DNA from: Octopus sinensis | Taxonomy: Eukaryota | Assembly: GCF_006345805.1 (NCBI RefSeq) | Contig: NC_043007.1 | Location: 66,836,001 to 66,900,000, forward strand | Direction: 5' to 3' | Length of the DNA stretch: 64,000 nt | Shown here: in pieces, positions 2,002 through 59,110 of the stretch | How the letters are laid out: every line of letters begins with the position of its first letter | Numbering within the stretch: the first letter of the stretch is position 1 | The notes under the pieces: generated by a model | The model's input: only the letters and a program-made list of their open reading frames with translations | Database searches by the model: none | What the model was told of the DNA's origin: nothing | Program-made: the position numbers and the translations under genes

Positions 2002-2352
2002 ATGATTGTGTTGGATTGGTAGAAACGTTAGAGCGTCAGATAATTACTGCTTCTTATGTTCTAAATTCCAATTCCACGTCAACTTTGCCTTTCATCAACA
2101 GAGGGACGTTGAAATAAAATACCACTCAAGAACTGAGGTCGGTTTAATTGATTGATCCCACTCCTCAAAATGACTGACCTTGCGCCAAAATTGAAAAAAA
2201 ACATTATCGTCATCATCGTCATTACGGTCATTATCATAATCATAACAACAATGACATTATCATTATCATCATTACCATCAGCAGCAGCAGCAGTAGAATT
2301 ACCATGTTATCAATAATTTCGACAGTACATCCTGATGCATCATTATATTCTC

Positions 2353-2558
2353 ATTTCTTTATTGCCCAGAAGGGGCTAAACACAGAGAGAACAAACAAGG
2401 ACAGACAAACGGATTAAGTCGATTATATCGACCCCACTGCGCAACTGATACTTAATTTATCGACCTCGACGGAATTTGTACTCAGAACGTAACGCCTGAC
2501 GAAATACCGCTAAGCATTTCGCCCGGCGCGCTAACGTTTCTGCTAGCTCGCCGCCTTA
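2353..2558 (-). mobile_element. tRNA-derived SINE family S1 (Tx1-like tail), ~27-bp internal deletion between tcgacc repeats
   Basis: Matches intact copies at 29151 and 29987; head aaggcggcgagct, tail gggcaataaagaaat. Confidence 0.85.
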
Positions 2559-2560
2559 GA

Positions 2561-2724
2561 ATAAACCTCTCGACCGGACGGGGCCCTGGGACGATGGGAT
2601 CCCGGGGCCCGCAATGTGCGTTCGAGGTGTCGATGTTCACTGAGTCCTGCAATTCGCATCAGTTCACGCGGATAGCCGCACTCTTCATCGACGGAAAGGC
2701 CGAGTGATCCCCCGTCCGTTATAT
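2561..2724 (-). pseudogene. 5.8S rRNA: Dispersed, essentially full-length 5.8S rRNA copy (retroposed), fused to a SINE
   Basis: Minus strand has ggatcactcggc, cgtcgatgaaga, gaattgcaggac, gaacatcgac and cgaacgcacattgcgg in 5.8S order; no ITS, 18S or 28S nearby. Confidence 0.9.
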
Positions 2725-2885
2725 TCATTATATTCTCGAGGAGAGTTCTGCATCGGTATCTCTTTTGGTATAGTATTCTGCATGCTGCATCTATTATGCT
2801 TTGTTGTGGATTTTTAATTTGTAAATTCTAATGTTAATTTAATGTTTCGTCCCGTTTGTTTGGCGATTCTTAGGATGATGTTTGT

Positions 2886-10266: not shown

Positions 10267-10650
10267 ATAGGCGTAGGTGTGACTGTGTAATAAGAAGCTT
10301 GCTTCCCAACCACATGCGTGGCACCTTGGGCAATTGTCTTCTACTATAGCCTCGGGCCGACCAAAGTCTTCAGTGGATTTAGTTGATGGAAACTGAAAGA
10401 AGCCCGTTGCGGTGGACCGCTGAAATCTAAAAGTTTATTTTTTTTCATTCTCTCTATTTTCTCTTATTCCTTTCTGTTGAAGAGCGTAGATTCGAACGTA
10501 AAAGACTTTTTCATTTTTCTCGAGCCTCAAATTAATACACTTGCTTGTTGTTCATACACCTGTCCTCGTCTTTTGCTTTTCTATAAATTTCAACTATATA
10601 TATATATCTATATATATATATATATCTATATATATATATATATATATATA

Positions 10651-12715: not shown

Positions 12716-13222
12716 AAACCTACTGATTGGAATCGAAGCACATTCTGTTTGTTTACGGACGCGGAGAACGTATAATCTTTTACTTCACAATGAGATCATA
12801 TGTTTCTTTTCCAAAACTGCCTTCATATATCTGTCTATATACTACACTGGACACCGTGTCAATATAACGAAAATATCCTTTCGCTAATTTCGCAAACTTC
12901 CGCACACAAATGTCTCCCACATTTGGACAAATAATGGAAATACCTTGCTAAATGTATGTTCCATTATGATGTTAGTCCGCCTTTAACATCAGTCAAAGAT
13001 TTAATATTTCGAGAAACTGGTTGGAACCGGATTCGCAAAATATAGGCTTAGCTCTCCTGTCACTTTTGCTGCTTTAGTTCCATGGTTTTTAGATACAATA
13101 TCTTTCCCTATACTCTGCGAGTTTTGCTCTTGCGCATGGAATTATGCATGTCAGGGCTAGTTTGATCTTGGTTTTAATGCCAATAAGATTTTAGACTCTA
13201 AACTCTCGAAAATTTAGAGACT

Positions 13223-13327
13223 AAGGCGGCGAGTGTCAAAATCGTTAGCACGCCGGGAAAAATTCTGAGCGGCATTTCGTCTGTCTTTATGCTCTGCGTT
13301 CCGCCGAGCTTGACTTTGCCTTTCATC
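13223..13327 (+). mobile_element. SINE S1 head, truncated by microsatellite
   Basis: aaggcggcgag...ttgactttgcctttcatc. Confidence 0.65.
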
Positions 13328-14070
13328 ATGTATGTATGCATGTATGTATGTATGTATGTATGTATGTATGTATGTATGTATGTATGTATGTATGTGTATA
13401 TATATGTATATGTGTATGTATGTATGCATGCATGTATGTATGTATGTGTATATATATGTATATTTGTATGCATGTATGTATGTATGTATGTATGCATGCA
13501 TTTATGTATGTATGTATGTATGTATGTATGTGTATATATATGTATATTTGTATGCATGTATGTATGCATGCATGTATGTATGTATGTGTATATATAAGTA
13601 TATTTGTATGCATGTATGTATGTATGTATGTATGTATGTGTATATATATGTATATTTGTATGCATGTATGTATGTATATATGTATGCATGCATGTATGTA
13701 TGTATGTATGTATGTGTATATATATGTATATCTGTATGCATGTATGTATGTATGTATGTATGTATGTGTATATATAAGTATATTTGTATGCACGTATGTG
13801 TGTATGTATGCATGTATGTATGTATGTAGTATGTATGTGTATATATATGTATATTTGTATGCATGTATGTATGTATGCATGTATGTATGTATGTATGTAT
13901 GTGTATATATATGTATATCTGTATGCATGTATGTATGTATATATGCATGCATGTATGTATGTATGTATGTATGCATGCATGTATGTATGTATGTATGTAT
14001 GTATGTATGCATGTATGTGTATATATATGTATATTTGTATGCATGTATGTGTGTATGTATCTATGTATGT
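13328..14070. repeat. Compound (GTAT)n microsatellite with higher-order unit
   Basis: About ten recurrences of gtgtatatata(t/a)gtatat(t/c)tgtatgcat between (gtat)n runs. Confidence 0.9.
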
Positions 14071-14076
14071 ATTCTT

Positions 14077-14290
14077 TCTTTTTATTCTTTTACTTGTTTC
14101 AGTCATTTGACTGCGGCCATGCTGGAGCACCACCTTTAGTCGAGCAAATCGACCCCAGGACTTATTCTTTGTAAGCTAAGTACTTATATTCTATCGGTCT
14201 CTTTTGCCGAACCGCTAAGTTACGGGGACGTAAACACGCCAGCATCGGTTGTCAAGCGATGTTGGGGGGGACAAACACAGACACACATAC
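14077..14290 (-). mobile_element. SINE S2 3' half
   Basis: cttttacttgtttcagtcatttgactgcggccatgctggagcacc... Confidence 0.8.
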
Positions 14291-20121: not shown

Positions 20122-20350
20122 ATTTCTTTACTACACACAAGGGGCTAAACATAAAGAGGACAAACAAGGACAGACAAACGGATTAAGTCGATTACATCGA
20201 CCCCAGTGCGTAACTGGTACTTAATTTATCGACCCCGAAAGGATGAAAAGCAAAGCCGACCTCGGCGGAATTTGAACTCAGAACGTAACGGCAGACGAAA
20301 TACAGCTATGCATTTCGCCCTGCGTGCTAATGTTTCTGCCAGCTCTCCGT
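20122..20350 (-). mobile_element. SINE S1 full length
   Basis: Matches 29151-29383. Confidence 0.85.
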
Positions 20351-26515: not shown

Positions 26516-26566
26516 TATTTCTTTACTACCCACAAGGGGCTAAACACAGAGGGGACAAACAAGGAC
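26516..26566 (-). mobile_element. Tail-only S1/Tx1-type retroposition with TSD
   Basis: ataccataaata at 26502-26513 and 26567-26578. Confidence 0.7.
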
Positions 26567-26937
26567 ATACCATAAATATACCATAAATACCAGTTGATCA
26601 TAGCGTTCATGGTCGGCCCAAATCAATCGCAGTACTTATTTGTAAATCTGGTTTTCAGCTCTTTTACTGAACCATTAAGTTATGAGGACGTCAGCCAACT
26701 AACATCGGTTGTAGGAGAATACGACGTAAATGCAAATACACTTAACGAAGATGCCGCTGAGTGGGATTGAACCCTAGTCCACATAGTTGGGAAGCAAGAT
26801 TCTTAGCCACACAGCCATACCTACATAAATAGCTAAAAAAAATAAAAGACGGGATGATCAAGGTTTTGAACGTCGTAGGTCTTGGTAGATCAACGTTAAC
26901 CCTGGGACGAAAGAACAACAACAACAATAATAGTAAC

Positions 26938-27172
26938 CTATTTCTTTATTACCCATAAGGGGCTAAACATAGAGGGAACAAACAAGGACAGACATAGGTA
27001 TTAAGTCGATTACATCGGCCCCAGTGCGTAACTGGTACTTAATCTATCGACCCCGAAAGGATGAAAGGCAAAGTCGACCTCGGCGGAATTTGAACTCACA
27101 ACGTAACGGCAGACGAAATACCGCTAAGCATTTCGCCCGGCGTGCTAACGTTTCTGCCAACTCGCCGCCCTT
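26938..27172 (-). mobile_element. SINE S1 full length
   Basis: Matches 29151-29383. Confidence 0.85.
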
Positions 27173-28249: not shown

Positions 28250-28655
28250 AATTATTGATTTCAAATTTTGGCACAAAGCCAGCAATTTCAGGGGAGAGAT
28301 TAAGTGGATTACAGCAACACCGAGTATTCAACTGGTATTTATTTTATCGACCCGAGAGAATGAAAAGCAAAGCCAACCTCGGTGGGATTTGAACTCAGAA
28401 CGCAATGACAGACGAAATACCTATTTCTTTACTACCTTACAAGGGGCTAAACACAGAGAGGACAAACAAGGACAGACAAACGGATTAAGTCGATTATATC
28501 GACCCCAGTGCGTAACTGGTACTTATTTAATCGACCCCGAAAGGATAAAAGGCAAAGTCGACCTCGGCGGAATTTGAACTCAGAACGTAGCAGCAGACAA
28601 AATGCCGCTAAGCATTTTGCTCGGTGTGCTAACGATTCTACCAGCTCGTTGCCTC
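28250..28655 (-). mobile_element. Two abutting S1 SINEs (alternative-tail copy 28250-28420, Tx1-tail copy 28421-28655)
   Basis: Shared core, different tails. Confidence 0.75.
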
Positions 28656-29150
28656 AGACTACTGAATTATTAATAGTTTTTTAGCCACAGGCAAGCCTTG
28701 AATGAGTATGCCTATGATCAAACATACGCCAAGCATGACCTTCTGTCATTTTTCAGATAGTGTATCGATGTCTACTAGATAGAATATAGCATCTAAGATA
28801 TTTTTATCCAATGTGTCATTTTTTCAGTCAGTAGGATATGATTTGACTGGTATTTGCCAGCTATTTCTAGCATGTAAAGCGACCAAAACAAAACAACAAA
28901 ACGCACGAATGTTCACCCACCCCAAACTCACATATATACAAACGCATACAAATATACATGATGTATACATATATGTGTGAGTGCTCCTTTCAACTTTTCC
29001 CTGAACAAGGACACTGTGCGAAACGTTGGATTTTCTATTCCTCACTGCAAGTTCATTGTATTCTTATCACCAATTTTACTAGATAATATATGTCTTGCCG
29101 ACGCAAATCAACACTAACCTCATTGGTGTCTGACATATATAAATGTGTGT

Positions 29151-29383
29151 TAAGGCGGCGAGCTGGCAGAAATGTTAGCGCGCCGGGCGAAAAACTTAGC
29201 GGTATTTCGTCTGTCGTTACGTTCTGAGTTCAAATTCCGCCGAGGTCGACTTTGCCTTTCATCCTTTCGGGGTCGATAAATTAAGTACCAGTTTCGCACT
29301 GGGGTCGATGTAATTGACTTAATCCCTTTGTCTGTCCTTGTTTGTCCCCTCTATGTTTAGCCCATTGTGGGCAATAAAGAAAT
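29151..29383 (+). mobile_element. SINE S1 reference copy with 16-bp TSD
   Basis: atatataaatgtgtgt at 29135-29150 and 29384-29399. Confidence 0.9.
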
Positions 29384-29986: not shown

Positions 29987-30221
29987 CTGAAGGCGGCGAG
30001 CTGGCAGAAGCGATAGCACACAGGGTGAAATGCTTAGCGGTATTTCGTCTGCCGCAACGTTCTGAGTTCAAATTCCGCCGAGGCCGACTTTGCCTTTCAT
30101 CCTTTCGGGGTTGATTAAATAAGTCCCAGTTACGCACTGGGGTCAATATAATCGACTTAATCTGTTTGTCTGTCTTTGTTTGCTCCCGCTGTGTGTAGCC
30201 CCTTGTGGGCAGTAAAGAAAG
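29987..30221 (+). mobile_element. SINE S1 with 10-bp TSD
   Basis: aagatgtaac at 29977-29986 and 30222-30231. Confidence 0.9.
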
Positions 30222-42418: not shown

Positions 42419-43278
42419 CAGGGGTCACCAAACTACGGCCTGCGAAGTCAATTCATCCGGTCCGCCATCGCTCTGTACCTTTTGTGCAAGTACCTGCATT
42501 TGCCTCCGGTATGGCATCAGTGTTTGTCACACATTATGTCTGTGAGCAAACATTTTCAAAAATGAAAAATGTGAAGTCAGCACATCGAACGAGGTTGACT
42601 GATAAACATTTGAAAACAATTCTTTTGGTTGGATGCAGCAACTCTAAAGCAAATATTGATATCTTAAAACCTAAACACTAGTTTCACAGATCTCACTAAA
42701 CTTTTTTGCTGCTTAGTTTGTGAGAGTCGGATATGTGCATACTAGGTGTGATATAACTATCTTATTGCTAATGTCACCGTCTTTAATAACTGGTAAATAA
42801 ATATGTTGGTTGTCTTTATTACCTCCTCCTTCGCTAAGGCGGAGGTATTGTTTTCAGTCGCCTTTGTTTGTTTGTTTGGCCGTGGATAAGATATCTCAAA
42901 AACCGCCGGATGGATTCGGATGAAACTTTCAGGGATGTTTGGCCTCGTGGCTGGAACGAACTGATTAGATTTTGGGATCGATCCGGTACCGGACAAAGAT
43001 TCTGGATTATTTTTCTTGTTCTTTGACTTAATTTTTGAGAGTGGTTGGTTTATCTTTTAGAGAGCAGCCGAGTTTATTTCAGATATCCTCATTTTAAAAA
43101 TCATCTCTGGCTAATCGTTGAGAAGACTTTGGTGTTGCCTTGGCGGAGGCTTGCGCTCTCTGAGTGCTCTCGTTTTTTATGCATTCACTGTATTGCATGA
43201 ACAAAATGGTTATGCAACCTGCGTTCGTCACTCTCTCAGTTATCTGGCCCGTCGTGAAAATACTTTGGTGAGCCCCTG
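42419..43278 (+). mobile_element. Internally deleted hAT (Buster/Charlie-type) element with transposase C-terminus
   Basis: TIRs caggggtcaccaaa / tttggtgagcccctg; TSD gtttagag at 42411-42418 and 43279-43286; YVCEQTFSKMKNVKSAHRTRLTDKHL dimerisation motif. Confidence 0.85.
42818..43174 (+). mobile_element. HINE-like element nested in the hAT
   Basis: Homologous to 1638-2001; inserted in a T-run. Confidence 0.7.
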
Positions 43279-45660: not shown

Positions 45661-45766
45661 GTAAACAGAAAAAAAGAATATCACAAAGATGGCTGATCGT
45701 AGCCTTCGCATGTGTGGGACTTTCGATCAGGTGGTGGCAATACTCGAACACGAGTTTTCAGCCATC

Positions 45767-45769
<3 letters not shown>

Positions 45770-45799
<30 letters not shown>

Positions 45800-46310
45800 T
45801 GTATGTATGTATGTATGTATGTATGTATGTGTGTGTGTATGTATGTATGTATGTATGTATGTATGTATGTAGTATGTATGTATGTAGCTGTATAATGTTG
45901 ATGTGGTATGAATGTATGTGTGTATGAATGTATGTATGTGTATGAATGTATGTATGTATGTGTGTATGAATGTATGTGTGTATGTATGTATGTATGTATG
46001 TATGTATGTGTATATATATGTATGTACGTATGAATGTATGTGTGTATGTATGTATGTATGTATGTGTGTGTGTATGAATGTATGTTTGTATGTATGTATG
46101 TATGTGTGTATGTATGTATGTATGTATGTATGTATGTGTGTATCTATGTGTGTGTATGTTTGTATGTGTGTATGTATGTATGTATGTGTGTATGTGTGTA
46201 TGTATGTATGTGTGTATGTATGTATGTATGTATGTGTGTGTGTATGTATGTATGTATGTATGTATGTATGTATGTATGTAGTATGTATGTATGTATGCAT
46301 GCATGCATGG
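45770..46310. repeat. (GTAT)n/(GT)n compound microsatellite
   Basis: Direct reading. Confidence 0.9.
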
Positions 46311-46449
46311 ATAAAGTAGAAGTCGTCTCGTGTCCGAGTAAGACCGACCGCTTTCTAGACCCATTTCACTCAAAGAAACATCTCACATTTGATCTCCTCA
46401 CCGTTGATAACGTCTTATATGGTTCCTAAGGTCTGCAAGGGATTTGCAG

Positions 46450-47455
46450 GTCATTCCATAGCAACCACAATAAACATTTTTTTACCCAGCAGCAGCCCGC
46501 CCATCTGAATGTTGAAACCTACAATGCCGAGTGAGTCCACTGGCCGATCCACACGCTCTTCTAAACAAGATACATGCGAGATCATGCTGGTTATCTCCTT
46601 CACAGACAGGGATGCCTTCGCAGACACGAGCATGGTCACACAAAAGAGATCTGTTCCTTCTTAAGAACTAAGTTTACATCCTCCATATATTTACCAGTAA
46701 TTTTGAACCCGGTGCATACAATCCTGTTGTTCTCGAATTCTCTAACATTATACTTCTCCACTGCTCCTATCTGATGTAAAATCTTCCCATGTGTTGGTAT
46801 TGATATCGATCTTTTCAAGAGTGTCTTTATCATTGTCTTCCAAACACTTGCACGGCTTGCACTGGAGACGTCTTCCTTGCTCCAATCCCATGCGAGTGTC
46901 TTCTAAATGGGCATAATGACCACACCGTCTAAGTTGGTGTTTCACAATCTTGGACTTGATACTCGCCATTTTCGCCAACTGCAGTACTCTTGTATCTGAT
47001 ACATGAGATCGCCATGAGATCTTCAGGATATTACGCAAGCATCGCTGGTTGAATCGCTGTACATGTTGGACATGCTTGTTGTAGGTTGTCCATGTCTCGC
47101 ATCCATACAACAACGCTGTTGTGATTTATGCTTGACAGACTTCAACTTTTGTAACTGCTTTGATGTCCGATTGTGACTAGAGTCTCGATTCAAGCTTTCC
47201 CAAATGCATCAGAAGCCTTAGAAAATTCTATACCAGACCTTCTCGTCGAGTGAATTAAATATAGATAGTATGCGACCAAGGTAGACAAATGCATCCGCGA
47301 CTTTAAACGTTTTGCCCTTGACGTGTGTCGACGGTGGGGTATATGACTTGCCTAGAGCAGTTTGTAAGATAATTATATTCCTAAAATTGATTATAAGTTC
47401 AAACTCAACATACGCGGCTGAAAAGCAGTCCATCAAGAGCTGCAGGTTTTCTTCA
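46450..47455 (-). pseudogene. RTE/BovB-like LINE RT 3' fragment
   Basis: LQLLMDCFSAAY...FVYLGRILS and LYGCETWTTY...RFNQRCLRNILKISWRSHVSDTRVL. Confidence 0.85.
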
Positions 47456-48005
47456 TACATACATACATACATACAGACTGACAGACAGACAGAGAGCCAG
47501 ACAGACAGTCATTCATGCATATATATACACATACGTTCATACATAAATGCATACATACATACATACATACACGCATACGTACATACATATTTCTCATGAT
47601 CTCAAGTGAGCGGTGGAGTGGATACAAATACAACCCTAAAACAGAAACAAAAACACATACACAGATACAAACGCACACACACATACACGCACAATATGTA
47701 TATATACGACGAGATTCTTTCAGTTTCATTCTACTAAATTTTCTCACAGGGCATTGGTCGGCTTGGGACCACAGTAGAAGACGCTTGCCCAAAGGCTGTA
47801 CAGTGGGACTGAACCTAAGACCAGATGGTTGAGAGGAAAGCTTCATAACCACACAGCTACGTCTGATGTTTCTTCAACCACACACACACACACACACACA
47901 AACAAACACAAATATATGTGTGTGTCTGTTTGTGTGTCTAGGTGTGTGTGTGTGCCTGTGTCTACGTGTGTGAGTGTGTGTCTACGTGTGTGTGTGTGTG
48001 TGTGT

Positions 48006-52533: not shown

Positions 52534-52803
52534 ATATGCATAAATGTATATATAAACATTAGTGTGGGTATGAAATTTTATTATGAATCACCCAGCACAC
52601 AGAAACAGCTGTTTGACTTATAACACCCTTCTCCCCTTTAATTTTCCCTGTACTTTGAACCTATTAATATAAATATCTAATTTTCATTCTTAGAAATTAA
52701 TCATCTGGAAGTATCCACCTTTTGCTTTCTCTCGTTTGGCCTGTATATACATATTTTTGTATTTCATACCTAAACTATTTACATTTAATATATTTGATGT
52801 ATT

Positions 52804-53028
52804 TAAAGGCAGCGAGCTGGCAGAAACGTTAGCGAGCCGGGCTAAATGCTTATCCGTTACGTTCTGAGTTCAAATTCCACCGAGGTCGACTTTGCCTTTC
52901 ATCCTTTCGGGGTCGATAAATAAAGTACTAGTTTGGCACTGGGGTTGATGTAATCGACTTAATCCCTTTGTCTGTCTTTGTTTGTCCACCCCCCCCCCCC
53001 GTGTTTAGCCCCTTGTGGGCAATAAAGA
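52804..53028 (+). mobile_element. SINE S1 with 17-bp TSD
   Basis: aatatatttgatgtatt at 52787-52803 and 53029-53045. Confidence 0.9.
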
Positions 53029-53381
53029 AATATATTTGATGTATTCAATTTGTTTGTCCGCATAATTGCCTCTATACCCGCTCAACTTGATCCCAAACTA
53101 ATATACTTAATATACTTAAATGTATATATACACACACACATATATATATATACATGTGTGTGTGCACATATATATGTGTGTATATGTATGTGCGCGAGTG
53201 TGTGTGTGTGTGTGACTGTCATAAAATGAGTGTTTTAACGTTTTCAATAATTAGCTTTAAAAACAAGAAAAAACTAACCATTACAAAACATACCCTCTTT
53301 TACAATGTGTCTGTCCTCCCTTCCCAGTCTCTCTCTCTTTCTCTCTCCCTTTCTCTCCCTCTTTCACTCTCACTCCCTCTA

Positions 53382-54084: not shown

Positions 54085-54525
54085 ACGGGTGACTGTGTGG
54101 TAAGAAGCTTGCTTCCTAACCACATGGTTCTAGATTCAGTCCCACTGCGTGGCACCTTGGGCAAGTTTCTTCCACTATAGCCCCGGGCTGATTAAAGCCT
54201 TATGACCGGATTTGGTAGATGGAAACTAAAAGAAGCCCGTCCTCTGTGTGAGTGTGTGTGTGAGTGTGTCTGTGTCTGTGTTTGTGTGTGCGCGTGTGTG
54301 TGTGTGTGTGTTCGTGTCTGTATTTGTCCGCCACCACTGCTTAACAACCGGTGTTGGTGTGTTTGTATTCCCGTAACATAGCAGTTCATGAAAAGTGAAT
54401 GATAGTAAAAGTACCAGGCTTAACAAAATGTAAGTACTGGGGTCGATCATTCGACAATAAAAATTCTTAAGCAGTGCCCCCAGCATGACCGCAGTCTAAT
54501 GGATGATGAAACAAGTAAAAAGAGA
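54085..54525 (+). mobile_element. SINE S2, older copy
   Basis: Both halves recognisable. Confidence 0.7.
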
Positions 54526-55543: not shown

Positions 55544-55910
55544 ATAGGCGCAGGAGTGGCTGTGTGGTAAGTAGCTTGCTAACCAACCACATGGTTCCGG
55601 GTTCAGTCCCACTGCGTGGCATCTTCGGCAAATGTCTTCTGCTATAGCCCCGGGCCGATCAATGCCTTGTGAGTGGATTTATATATATATGTGTGTGTTT
55701 GTGTGTCTGTGTTTGTCCCCCTAGCATCGCTTGACAACCGATGCTGGTGTGTTTACGTCCCCGTCACTTAGCGGTTCGGCAAAAAAAAGACCGATAGAAT
55801 AAGTACTGGGCTTACAAAGAATAAGTCCCGGGGTCGAGTTGCTCGATTAAAGGCGGTGCTCCAGCATGGCCGCAGTCAAATGACTGAAACAAGTAAAAGA
55901 GAAAGAGAGA
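55544..55910 (+). mobile_element. SINE S2
   Basis: Matches 48451-48857 with a short internal deletion. Confidence 0.9.
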
Positions 55911-59010: not shown

Positions 59011-59110
59011 NNNNNNNNNNNNNNNNNNNNNNNNNNNNNNNNNNNNNNNNNNNNNNNNNNNNNNNNNNNNNNNNNNNNNNNNNNNNNNNNNNNNNNNNNN
59101 NNNNNNNNNN
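59011..59110. other. Assembly gap (100 N)
   Basis: Direct reading. Confidence 1.

What the first reader, a model, noticed from the sequence alone, without database searches (positions are those of the whole stretch)
2340..2737. 5.8S rRNA-SINE chimera inserted as one event (13-bp TSD)
Seen: tcattatattctc occurs at 2340-2352 and 2725-2737. On the minus strand it encloses a complete 5.8S rRNA (2724 to 2561) joined directly to the 5' end of an S1 SINE (2558 to 2353), with no ITS sequence. Established: U6-L1 type chimeras arise from template switching or RNA ligation by L1-clade machinery, and described SINE heads come from tRNA, 7SL, 5S, U1/U2 or 28S. Inference: this is either a one-off chimera of mature 5.8S and a SINE, or a member of a 5.8S-headed retroposon family, which I do not know to be described. 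The ~27-bp deletion in this SINE is a diagnostic tag.
Basis: partly seen in the sequence, partly recalled or inferred. Interest (0 to 1): 0.75.

Follow-up and report, generated by a model that had tools for sequence, protein, structure and literature searches.

The report
5.8S rRNA–SINE chimeric retrocopy
A complete copy of 5.8S ribosomal RNA fused head-to-tail to a full-length SINE was pasted into this animal genome in one retroposition event, a known kind of accident (reverse transcriptase hopping from one RNA to another) with an RNA partner I found no published report of.

Summary
An exact 13-bp direct repeat (tcattatattctc, 2340-2352 and 2725-2737) lies flush against a 372-bp insert. On the minus strand the insert is a full-length 5.8S rRNA copy (Rfam model 1-154, 90 bits, 2723-2564), up to 6 ambiguous junction bases (2563-2558), and a full-length copy of the window's abundant SINE (2557-2353). 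Neither half has its own target-site duplication. Five other copies of this SINE in the window carry flush duplications of 7-17 bp, so 13 bp is typical. No internal transcribed spacer is present beyond a possible 2-6 bases.

Best reading: one target-primed reverse transcription event. The partner LINE's enzyme copied the SINE RNA to its 5' end, then jumped to the 3' end of mature 5.8S rRNA and copied that too.

The "5.8S-headed family" reading could not be tested, because no collection available here holds the host genome. It is disfavoured: about 20 SINE copies or fragments in the window lack the head, and 5.8S has no Pol III promoter.

This is a new member of a known kind. Interest is moderate to low.

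The parts
2340..2352 (.). Target-site duplication, copy next to the SINE 3' end (tcattatattctc on +; GAGAATATAATGA in element sense)
   Evidence: Exact 13-mer present only at 2340 and 2725 in the window. It is flush with the SINE 3' end AAAGAAAT.
2353..2557 (-). Full-length copy of the window's abundant SINE ('S1'). It is 7.7% from the local consensus and carries a unique 27-bp internal deletion.
   Evidence: Aligns from the consensus 5' end (AAGGCGGCGAGC) to the 3' end (GGGCAATAAAGAAAT) with six other full copies. The deletion lies between the CCGAGGTCGA and CGGGGTCGA repeats.
2558..2563 (-). Junction bases TATTCT (element sense). Assignment is ambiguous: the last bases of 5.8S, the first bases of ITS2, non-templated additions by the reverse transcriptase, or (the last T) the first base of the SINE.
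   Evidence: They lie between the end of the Rfam 5.8S match (2564) and the shared SINE start AAGG.
2564..2724 (-). Complete 5.8S rRNA retro-copy (pseudogene), with both ends within about 1-3 nt of the mature termini and no ITS1
   Evidence: Rfam RF00002, model 1-154/154, 90 bits, E=4e-21, with only two non-standard pairs. One base (2724) separates it from the TSD. A 5.8S in rDNA context (L001) scores 128 bits.
2725..2737 (.). Target-site duplication, copy next to the 5.8S 5' end
   Evidence: Identical 13-mer.

Best explanation
This is a bipartite chimeric retrocopy made in one target-primed reverse transcription (TPRT) event.

Proposed sequence of steps:
1. The reverse transcriptase of the LINE that mobilises this SINE nicked the target at GAGAATATAATGA.
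2. It primed on the SINE RNA's 3' tail and copied the SINE RNA to its very 5' end.
3. Instead of stopping, it jumped end to end onto the 3' end of a mature (or a-few-nt 3'-extended) 5.8S rRNA molecule.
4. It copied that RNA to its 5' end.
5. Second-strand synthesis and repair then produced one 13-bp target-site duplication around the whole 372-bp insert.

Shown here: the anatomy, the sense-sense orientation, the full-length ends of both RNAs, the single flush TSD, and that this TSD length is typical for the SINE family.

Inferred: the template jump itself (as opposed to RNA ligation before reverse transcription), the identity of the LINE, and that the copy is inert. The 5.8S part cannot be carried along by Pol III transcripts that start at the SINE's internal promoter. 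The locus is therefore most likely a dead-on-arrival, one-off pseudogene.
For: - Full-length 5.8S (model 1-154) on the same strand as the SINE, and immediately 5' of it.
- The SINE is full length, and its 5' end coincides with the 5' ends of the other copies.
- At most 6 unassigned bases sit at the junction, within the range of non-templated additions reported for R2 template jumps (PMC3414825).
- An exact 13-bp TSD is flush with the outer ends only. There is no repeat of 6 bp or more around the SINE alone or at the ends of the 5.8S alone.
- Other copies of the same SINE have flush TSDs of 7-17 bp, including a 54-bp 5'-truncated copy. The family therefore moves by TPRT, and 13 bp is typical.
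- The chance expectation of such a flush repeat is at most about 5e-4.
- In vivo template jumps from the 5' end of a retroelement RNA to small stable RNAs are documented: U6, U3, U5, 5S, tRNA, 28S, 7SL, Y and 7SK with L1, and U12 and tRNA with R2.
- About 20 SINE copies or fragments are in the window, and only this one has a 5.8S head.
Against: - The copy number in the host genome could not be measured, so descent from an older chimeric master copy is not excluded.
- No orthologous or paralogous empty site was available.
- The host's own rDNA 5.8S and ITS2 could not be retrieved. It is therefore unknown whether the junction bases TATTCT are ITS2-derived, and whether the 5.8S part matches the host rRNA.
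- The 5.8S part looks more diverged than the SINE part. The SINE part is 7.7% from its consensus. I attribute this to a lineage-specific 5.8S sequence but did not show it.
- Template switching and prior RNA ligation cannot be told apart from a single locus.
Confidence: 0.72

Rival explanations
1. The locus is one member of a multi-copy, 5.8S-headed retroposon family. A chimeric master copy is transcribed and repeatedly retroposed using the SINE tail.
For: - The insert has the layout of a composite SINE: an RNA-derived head, a body and a LINE-recognised tail.
- rRNA-derived SINE heads exist for 5S and 28S.
- An R2 subfamily that kept a U12 head after a template jump has been proposed.
- The unique 27-bp deletion could mark a subfamily.
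Against: - No second 5.8S-like sequence exists in 64 kb that holds about 20 copies or fragments of the SINE.
- 5.8S is a Pol I product cut from a precursor and has no internal promoter (established knowledge).
- The SINE's internal promoter would start transcription downstream of the 5.8S part, so daughter copies would lose the head unless an outside promoter read through (inference).
- Nothing of this kind turned up in the searched literature.
- Copy number itself was not testable.
Confidence: 0.1
2. The two RNAs were joined before reverse transcription, and the chimeric RNA was then retroposed through the SINE tail. One route is an RNA ligase, as proposed for U6/L1. The other is a co-transcript: a pre-rRNA fragment from an rDNA unit that carries this SINE in ITS2 just after 5.8S.
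For: - It predicts the same anatomy and the same single TSD.
- The junction bases TATTCT could be the first bases of ITS2.
Against: - The SINE part is full length. A primary Pol III transcript carries a 5' triphosphate, which is a poor substrate for the RtcB-type ligation invoked for U6 (established knowledge, inference).
- The 5.8S 3' end is made by exonucleases and has no cyclic phosphate.
- The co-transcript route needs an unobserved SINE insertion at a very specific rDNA position.
Confidence: 0.12
3. Two independent insertions (a 5.8S retropseudogene and a SINE) landed side by side, and the 13-bp repeat is coincidental. Alternatively the arrangement is an assembly artefact.
For: - The region is repeat-dense. 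An older SINE-like fragment lies 190 bp away at 2054-2159.
- The assembly has a gap elsewhere, at 59011-59110.
- The 5.8S part looks more diverged than the SINE part.
Against: - The 13-mer is flush with the two outer ends, unique in the window and non-periodic. Its chance expectation is at most about 5e-4.
- Neither part has its own TSD.
- The two parts abut within 6 bp at the exact termini of both RNAs and in the same orientation.
Confidence: 0.04

Closest known systems
U6/L1-type bipartite chimeric retrocopies of mammals (small RNA + L1 or Alu 3' part)
   Same: - A full-length small stable RNA is fused in sense orientation to the 5' side of a retroelement sequence.
- One TSD surrounds the whole insert.
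- It is explained by a template switch of the LINE reverse transcriptase.
   Different: - The 5' partner is 5.8S rRNA, which is absent from the lists I could read: U6, U3, U5, 5S, tRNA, 28S, 7SL, Y, 7SK.
- The 3' partner is a complete SINE rather than a 5'-truncated L1.
- There is no poly(A) tail, so the enzyme is probably not an L1-clade LINE.
- The host is an invertebrate-like genome. I recall this SINE from octopus genomes, but that is memory and was not verified here.
R2 template jumps to U12 snRNA and tRNA in Drosophila (PMC3414825)
   Same: [quoted passage not shown]
- A few non-templated bases sit at junctions.
- The LINE involved recognises a specific 3' tail.
   Different: R2 inserts site-specifically into 28S rDNA and is an autonomous element. 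Here the first template is a dispersed SINE and the acceptor is 5.8S.
Chimeric retrogenes of Magnaporthe (WEIRD RNA + MGL LINE / Mg-SINE; PMC2104539)
   Same: An abundant non-coding RNA is fused directly to a LINE or SINE copy by template jumps during LINE reverse transcription (abstract).
   Different: The Magnaporthe elements are a recurrent, multi-copy class in a fungus with a different RNA partner. Only one locus is seen here.
rRNA-headed SINEs (SINE3/AmnSINE1 and other 5S-derived; SINE28, 28S-derived)
   Same: An rRNA-derived 5' part is joined to a LINE-dependent 3' part.
   Different: Those are propagating families, and the 5S heads supply a Pol III promoter. 5.8S supplies none, and no second copy was seen.

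Membership tests
Template-switch chimeric retrocopy (U6/L1 type) | Two unrelated RNAs fused in the same orientation, with the retroelement part at the 3' side | tested here: met
   5.8S (2723-2564) and SINE (2557-2353) are both on the minus strand, with 5.8S at the 5' side.
Template-switch chimeric retrocopy (U6/L1 type) | A single target-site duplication around the whole chimera, none around either part | tested here: met
   The 13-bp repeat is flush at the outer ends only.
Template-switch chimeric retrocopy (U6/L1 type) | The junction lies at RNA termini (acceptor RNA 3' end joined to donor RNA 5' end), with no genomic spacer | tested here: met
   The 5.8S model end (154) and the shared SINE 5' end are at most 6 nt apart. 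There is no ITS beyond that.
Template-switch chimeric retrocopy (U6/L1 type) | The two parts are not adjacent in their source loci (made at RNA/cDNA level, not copied from a genomic arrangement) | not testable with these tools
   Host genome and rDNA are not in any reachable collection.
Template-switch chimeric retrocopy (U6/L1 type) | L1 hallmarks: poly(A) tail and TT/AAAA-like target | tested here: not met
   The element ends in AATAAAGAAAT with no A-run, and the TSD is GAGAATATAATGA. It therefore works like the L1 chimeras but was probably made by another LINE clade.
SINE family with a 5.8S-derived head | Multiple dispersed copies sharing the head-body junction | not testable with these tools
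   Only one copy exists in 64 kb, among about 20 SINE copies or fragments.
SINE family with a 5.8S-derived head | The head supplies an internal Pol III promoter, so the whole unit is transcribed | not tested
   By established knowledge 5.8S is processed from a Pol I precursor and has no A/B or 5S-type promoter. No transcription data were available.
5.8S rRNA (Rfam RF00002), functional gene | Matches the covariance model above the gathering score over its full length | tested here: met
   90 bits against a gathering score of 42, model 1-154. This is lower than the 128 bits of an rDNA copy.
5.8S rRNA (Rfam RF00002), functional gene | Lies between ITS1 and ITS2 in an 18S-5.8S-28S unit | tested here: not met
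   It is flanked by a TSD and a SINE, and there is no SSU or LSU match anywhere in the window. It is therefore a retro-pseudogene.

The most novel reading that the evidence does not exclude
The locus is the founder or a member of a propagating 5.8S-headed composite retroposon, which would be a head type I found no report of. More modestly, it is the first evidence that a non-L1 LINE of a mollusc-like genome recurrently uses mature 5.8S rRNA as a template-switch acceptor. Recurrent use would imply that reverse transcription happens close to ribosomes or pre-ribosomes.
Probability: 0.1. Interest if true: 0.6.

Novelty: new member of a known kind. Interest (0 to 1): 0.35.

Why it matters
Chimeric retrocopies are natural records of which RNAs a LINE reverse transcriptase meets and can jump to, and they are the raw material from which new SINEs are assembled. 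A clean, complete 5.8S-SINE fusion with an intact TSD has three consequences:
- It extends the list of acceptor RNAs to 5.8S.
- It shows the process outside the L1/mammal and R2/Drosophila systems.
- It gives a precise junction sequence that can be used to count such events genome-wide.

As a single, probably inert locus it has no obvious functional consequence.

Tried and rejected
1. Protein-proxy searches for other copies. The junction-spanning ORF (2482-2652, minus) found nothing. The 5.8S ORF (2543-2728, minus) found only P0001, a spurious ORF on the rDNA of an unrelated eukaryote (L001/L002).
2. Exact look-ups of window ORFs in the assembly index returned 'not on record'.
3. DNA pattern scans for the SINE core, a 5.8S-variant pattern and a 5.8S internal stretch in viral, metagenome and prokaryote-genome collections all returned 0 hits. 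Copy number, an orthologous empty site and the 5.8S/ITS2 ends could therefore not be tested.
4. Host identification through the LINE RT fragment gave one unnamed ENA hit and no Pfam hit.
5. A search of paper texts for SINE sequence strings gave no relevant hit.
6. Paralogous empty site: the flanks are not repeated in the window, apart from an old SINE-like fragment in the left flank at about 2017-2159 and a repeat of the distal left flank 1840-2001 at 43027-43174.
7. tRNA origin of the SINE head: ARAGORN on the window found none and Rfam at E<=10 found none. Only a weak cloverleaf appeared at a relaxed threshold. I make no claim about the origin of the head.
8. Separate TSDs for each half were rejected.
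9. I first read the differences from the canonical 5.8S as a compensatory helix change around GAAUUGCAG. Against the Rfam structure only one pair in the first hairpin is a clear double change (A:U to G:C), so I do not lean on covariation.

Full report
**Check of the observation**

The + strand carries tcattatattctc at 2340-2352 and again at 2725-2737. This 13-mer occurs nowhere else in the window on either strand. The bases next to it differ on both sides, so the repeat is exactly 13 bp.

Rfam's 5.8S rRNA model matches 2723..2564 on the minus strand over its whole length (1-154/154). The score is 90 bits against a gathering score of 42, with only two non-standard pairs. It is the only Rfam match at gathering score in the 64 kb.

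Directly 3' of it on the same strand lies a copy of a repeat with six other full-length copies in the window (29151-29383 +, 26940-27169 -, 20122-20349 -, 28423-28656 -, 29990-30220 +, 52803-53031 +). A further dozen or so fragments are also present.

The alignment fixes the ends of this SINE at (T)AAGGCGGCGAGCTGGCAG... and ...GGGCAATAAAGAAAT. The copy at 2557-2353 reaches both ends. It lacks 27 bp that every other copy has. The missing stretch lies between the imperfect direct repeats CCGAGGTCGA and CGGGGTCGA.

**One event or two**

A boundary scan finds the 13-bp repeat flush against the outer ends of the composite. It finds no repeat of 6 bp or more around the SINE alone, and none at the ends of the 5.8S alone.

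The same scan shows flush target-site duplications around other copies of this SINE:
- 16 bp at c29151.
- 14-17 bp at c52803.
- 10 bp at c29990.
- 7 bp at c20122.
- 14-16 bp at a 54-bp 5'-truncated copy (26517-26570).

The family therefore inserts by target-primed reverse transcription, and 13 bp is typical.

The window is rich in repeats, so I measured the background. There are 260 non-periodic direct repeats of 13 bp or more at 200-600 bp spacing, or about 1e-5 per position-distance pair. With +/-3 bp of slack at each boundary this gives an expectation of at most about 5e-4. Composition alone gives about 3e-8 per 13-mer match. A single insertion of the whole 372-bp unit is well supported.

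**The junctions**

In element sense the insert reads: TSD GAGAATATAATGA, then A, then TATAACGGACGGGGGATCAC..., the 5.8S body...GGTCGAGAGGTT, then TATTCT, then AAGGCGGCGAGC..., the SINE body...AATAAAGAAAT, then TSD GAGAATATAATGA.

- The distance from the 5' end to the conserved GGATCAC is 14 nt. This is the same as in human 5.8S as I remember it, which is a lead rather than a database record.
- By the same length comparison the 3' end would fall near 2561.
- Both 5.8S ends are therefore within a few bases of mature termini. There is no ITS1, and at most 2-6 bases could be ITS2 or non-templated.
- The SINE begins where the other copies begin.

**Mechanism**

The layout is a mature small RNA in sense orientation on the 5' side, a complete retroelement RNA on the 3' side, one TSD, and a few extra bases at the joint. 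This is what an end-to-end template jump during TPRT produces.

Such jumps are documented for L1 onto U6, U3, U5, 5S, tRNA, 28S, 7SL, Y and 7SK RNAs. They are also documented for R2 onto U12 snRNA and tRNA, with non-templated bases at junctions (PMC3414825). The R2 enzyme is reported to do this in vitro (Bibillo and Eickbush 2004, cited in PMC3414825).

I therefore propose the following. The SINE's partner LINE primed on the SINE tail and reached the SINE RNA's 5' end. It then continued on the 3' end of a 5.8S rRNA molecule up to that RNA's 5' end. This step is inferred, not shown.

RNA joining before reverse transcription gives the same product and cannot be excluded from one locus. The joining could be by ligation, or by a pre-rRNA co-transcript from an rDNA unit with the SINE in ITS2. 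Ligation seems less likely for a full-length Pol III transcript with a 5' triphosphate.

The 27-bp deletion could be a slip of the enzyme between the two GGTCGA repeats, a feature of the source RNA, or a later replication slip. No other copy in the window shares it.

**Which enzyme**

The SINE has no poly(A) tail and ends in AATAAAGAAAT.

No LINE in the window shares the tail. The one RT fragment present (46748-47113, minus) has a different 3' region.

**Family or one-off**

I could not count copies in the host genome. The junction ORF and the 5.8S ORF used as protein proxies found nothing relevant. Exact look-ups failed. DNA scans of the viral, metagenome and prokaryote collections with SINE and 5.8S patterns all returned zero.

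Within the window about 20 SINE copies or fragments lack any 5.8S head, and there is no second 5.8S-like sequence.

5.8S is cut from a Pol I precursor and has no internal promoter. Pol III transcripts driven from inside the SINE would begin downstream of the 5.8S part, so daughters would lose it (established knowledge plus inference). I put the family reading at about 0.1.

**Age and an unexplained point**

The SINE part is 7.7% from a consensus of six local copies. The 5.8S part scores 90 bits, against 128 bits for a 5.8S in rDNA context from an unrelated eukaryote (L001).

Several differences sit at positions that are usually conserved. One hairpin pair is changed on both sides (A:U to G:C), and one stem mismatch looks like CpG decay. 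The simplest account is a lineage-specific 5.8S sequence plus about 8% decay. Without the host rDNA this remains unshown.

**Host**

The window is AT-rich, crowded with microsatellites and SINEs, and has one 100-N gap. I recall this SINE sequence from octopus genomes. That is memory only, and none of my attempts verified it.

**Comparison and novelty**

The locus works like the U6/L1 and R2/U12 chimeras. It meets their structural criteria except the L1-specific ones (poly(A) tail and L1 target motif).

The searchable literature I consulted lists no 5.8S partner and no 5.8S-derived element. That library is incomplete; for example Buzdin et al. 2003 was not held.

I class it as a new member of a known kind. 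It is a neat, well-preserved example, moderately interesting to mobile-element specialists, and probably without function.

Noticed in passing
window 26700-26850 (minus); also about 55557-55638, 47802-47857, 54090-54166, 10273-10310: A second, unrelated SINE-like repeat with a tRNA-like head (GGCTGTGTGGCTAAGAA...GGGTTCAATCCCAC). ARAGORN at a relaxed threshold gives a Gly-like cloverleaf.
   Followed up: partly
window 26517-26570 (minus): A 54-bp 5'-truncated copy of the main SINE, flanked by a 14-16 bp TSD (GGTATTTATGGTAT...). This is direct evidence that the family moves by TPRT with 5' truncation.
   Followed up: yes
window 2054-2159 (+): An old fragment related to the same SINE (72% to the consensus), in opposite orientation and about 190 bp from the chimera.
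   Followed up: partly
window 46748-47420 (minus): A degraded LINE reverse-transcriptase C-terminal fragment (YGCETW motif). It has no Pfam hit and only one unnamed ENA homologue. Its 3' region does not resemble the SINE tail.
   Followed up: partly
window 59011-59110: A run of 100 N, which is an assembly gap, so the window comes from a scaffolded assembly.
   Followed up: no
window 13200-14130, 45760-46370 and many others: Very dense imperfect microsatellite arrays (TATG/CATA-type, GT, CT). They create long spurious ORFs in several frames.
   Followed up: no
window 2564-2724 (minus): The 5.8S copy differs from the Rfam consensus at several normally conserved positions (e.g. GGCCUUUCCGUCGAUG instead of GGCUCGUGCGUCGAUG). 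It scores 38 bits below a 5.8S in rDNA context. This may reflect an unusual host 5.8S and could not be checked.
   Followed up: partly
L001 566-724 and 1691-5214; L002: Protein P0001 in the public collection is a spurious ORF called across the 5.8S gene of a eukaryotic rDNA contig (GCA_009772315.1 and an ENA metagenome). It is an example of rRNA mis-annotated as protein.
   Followed up: partly
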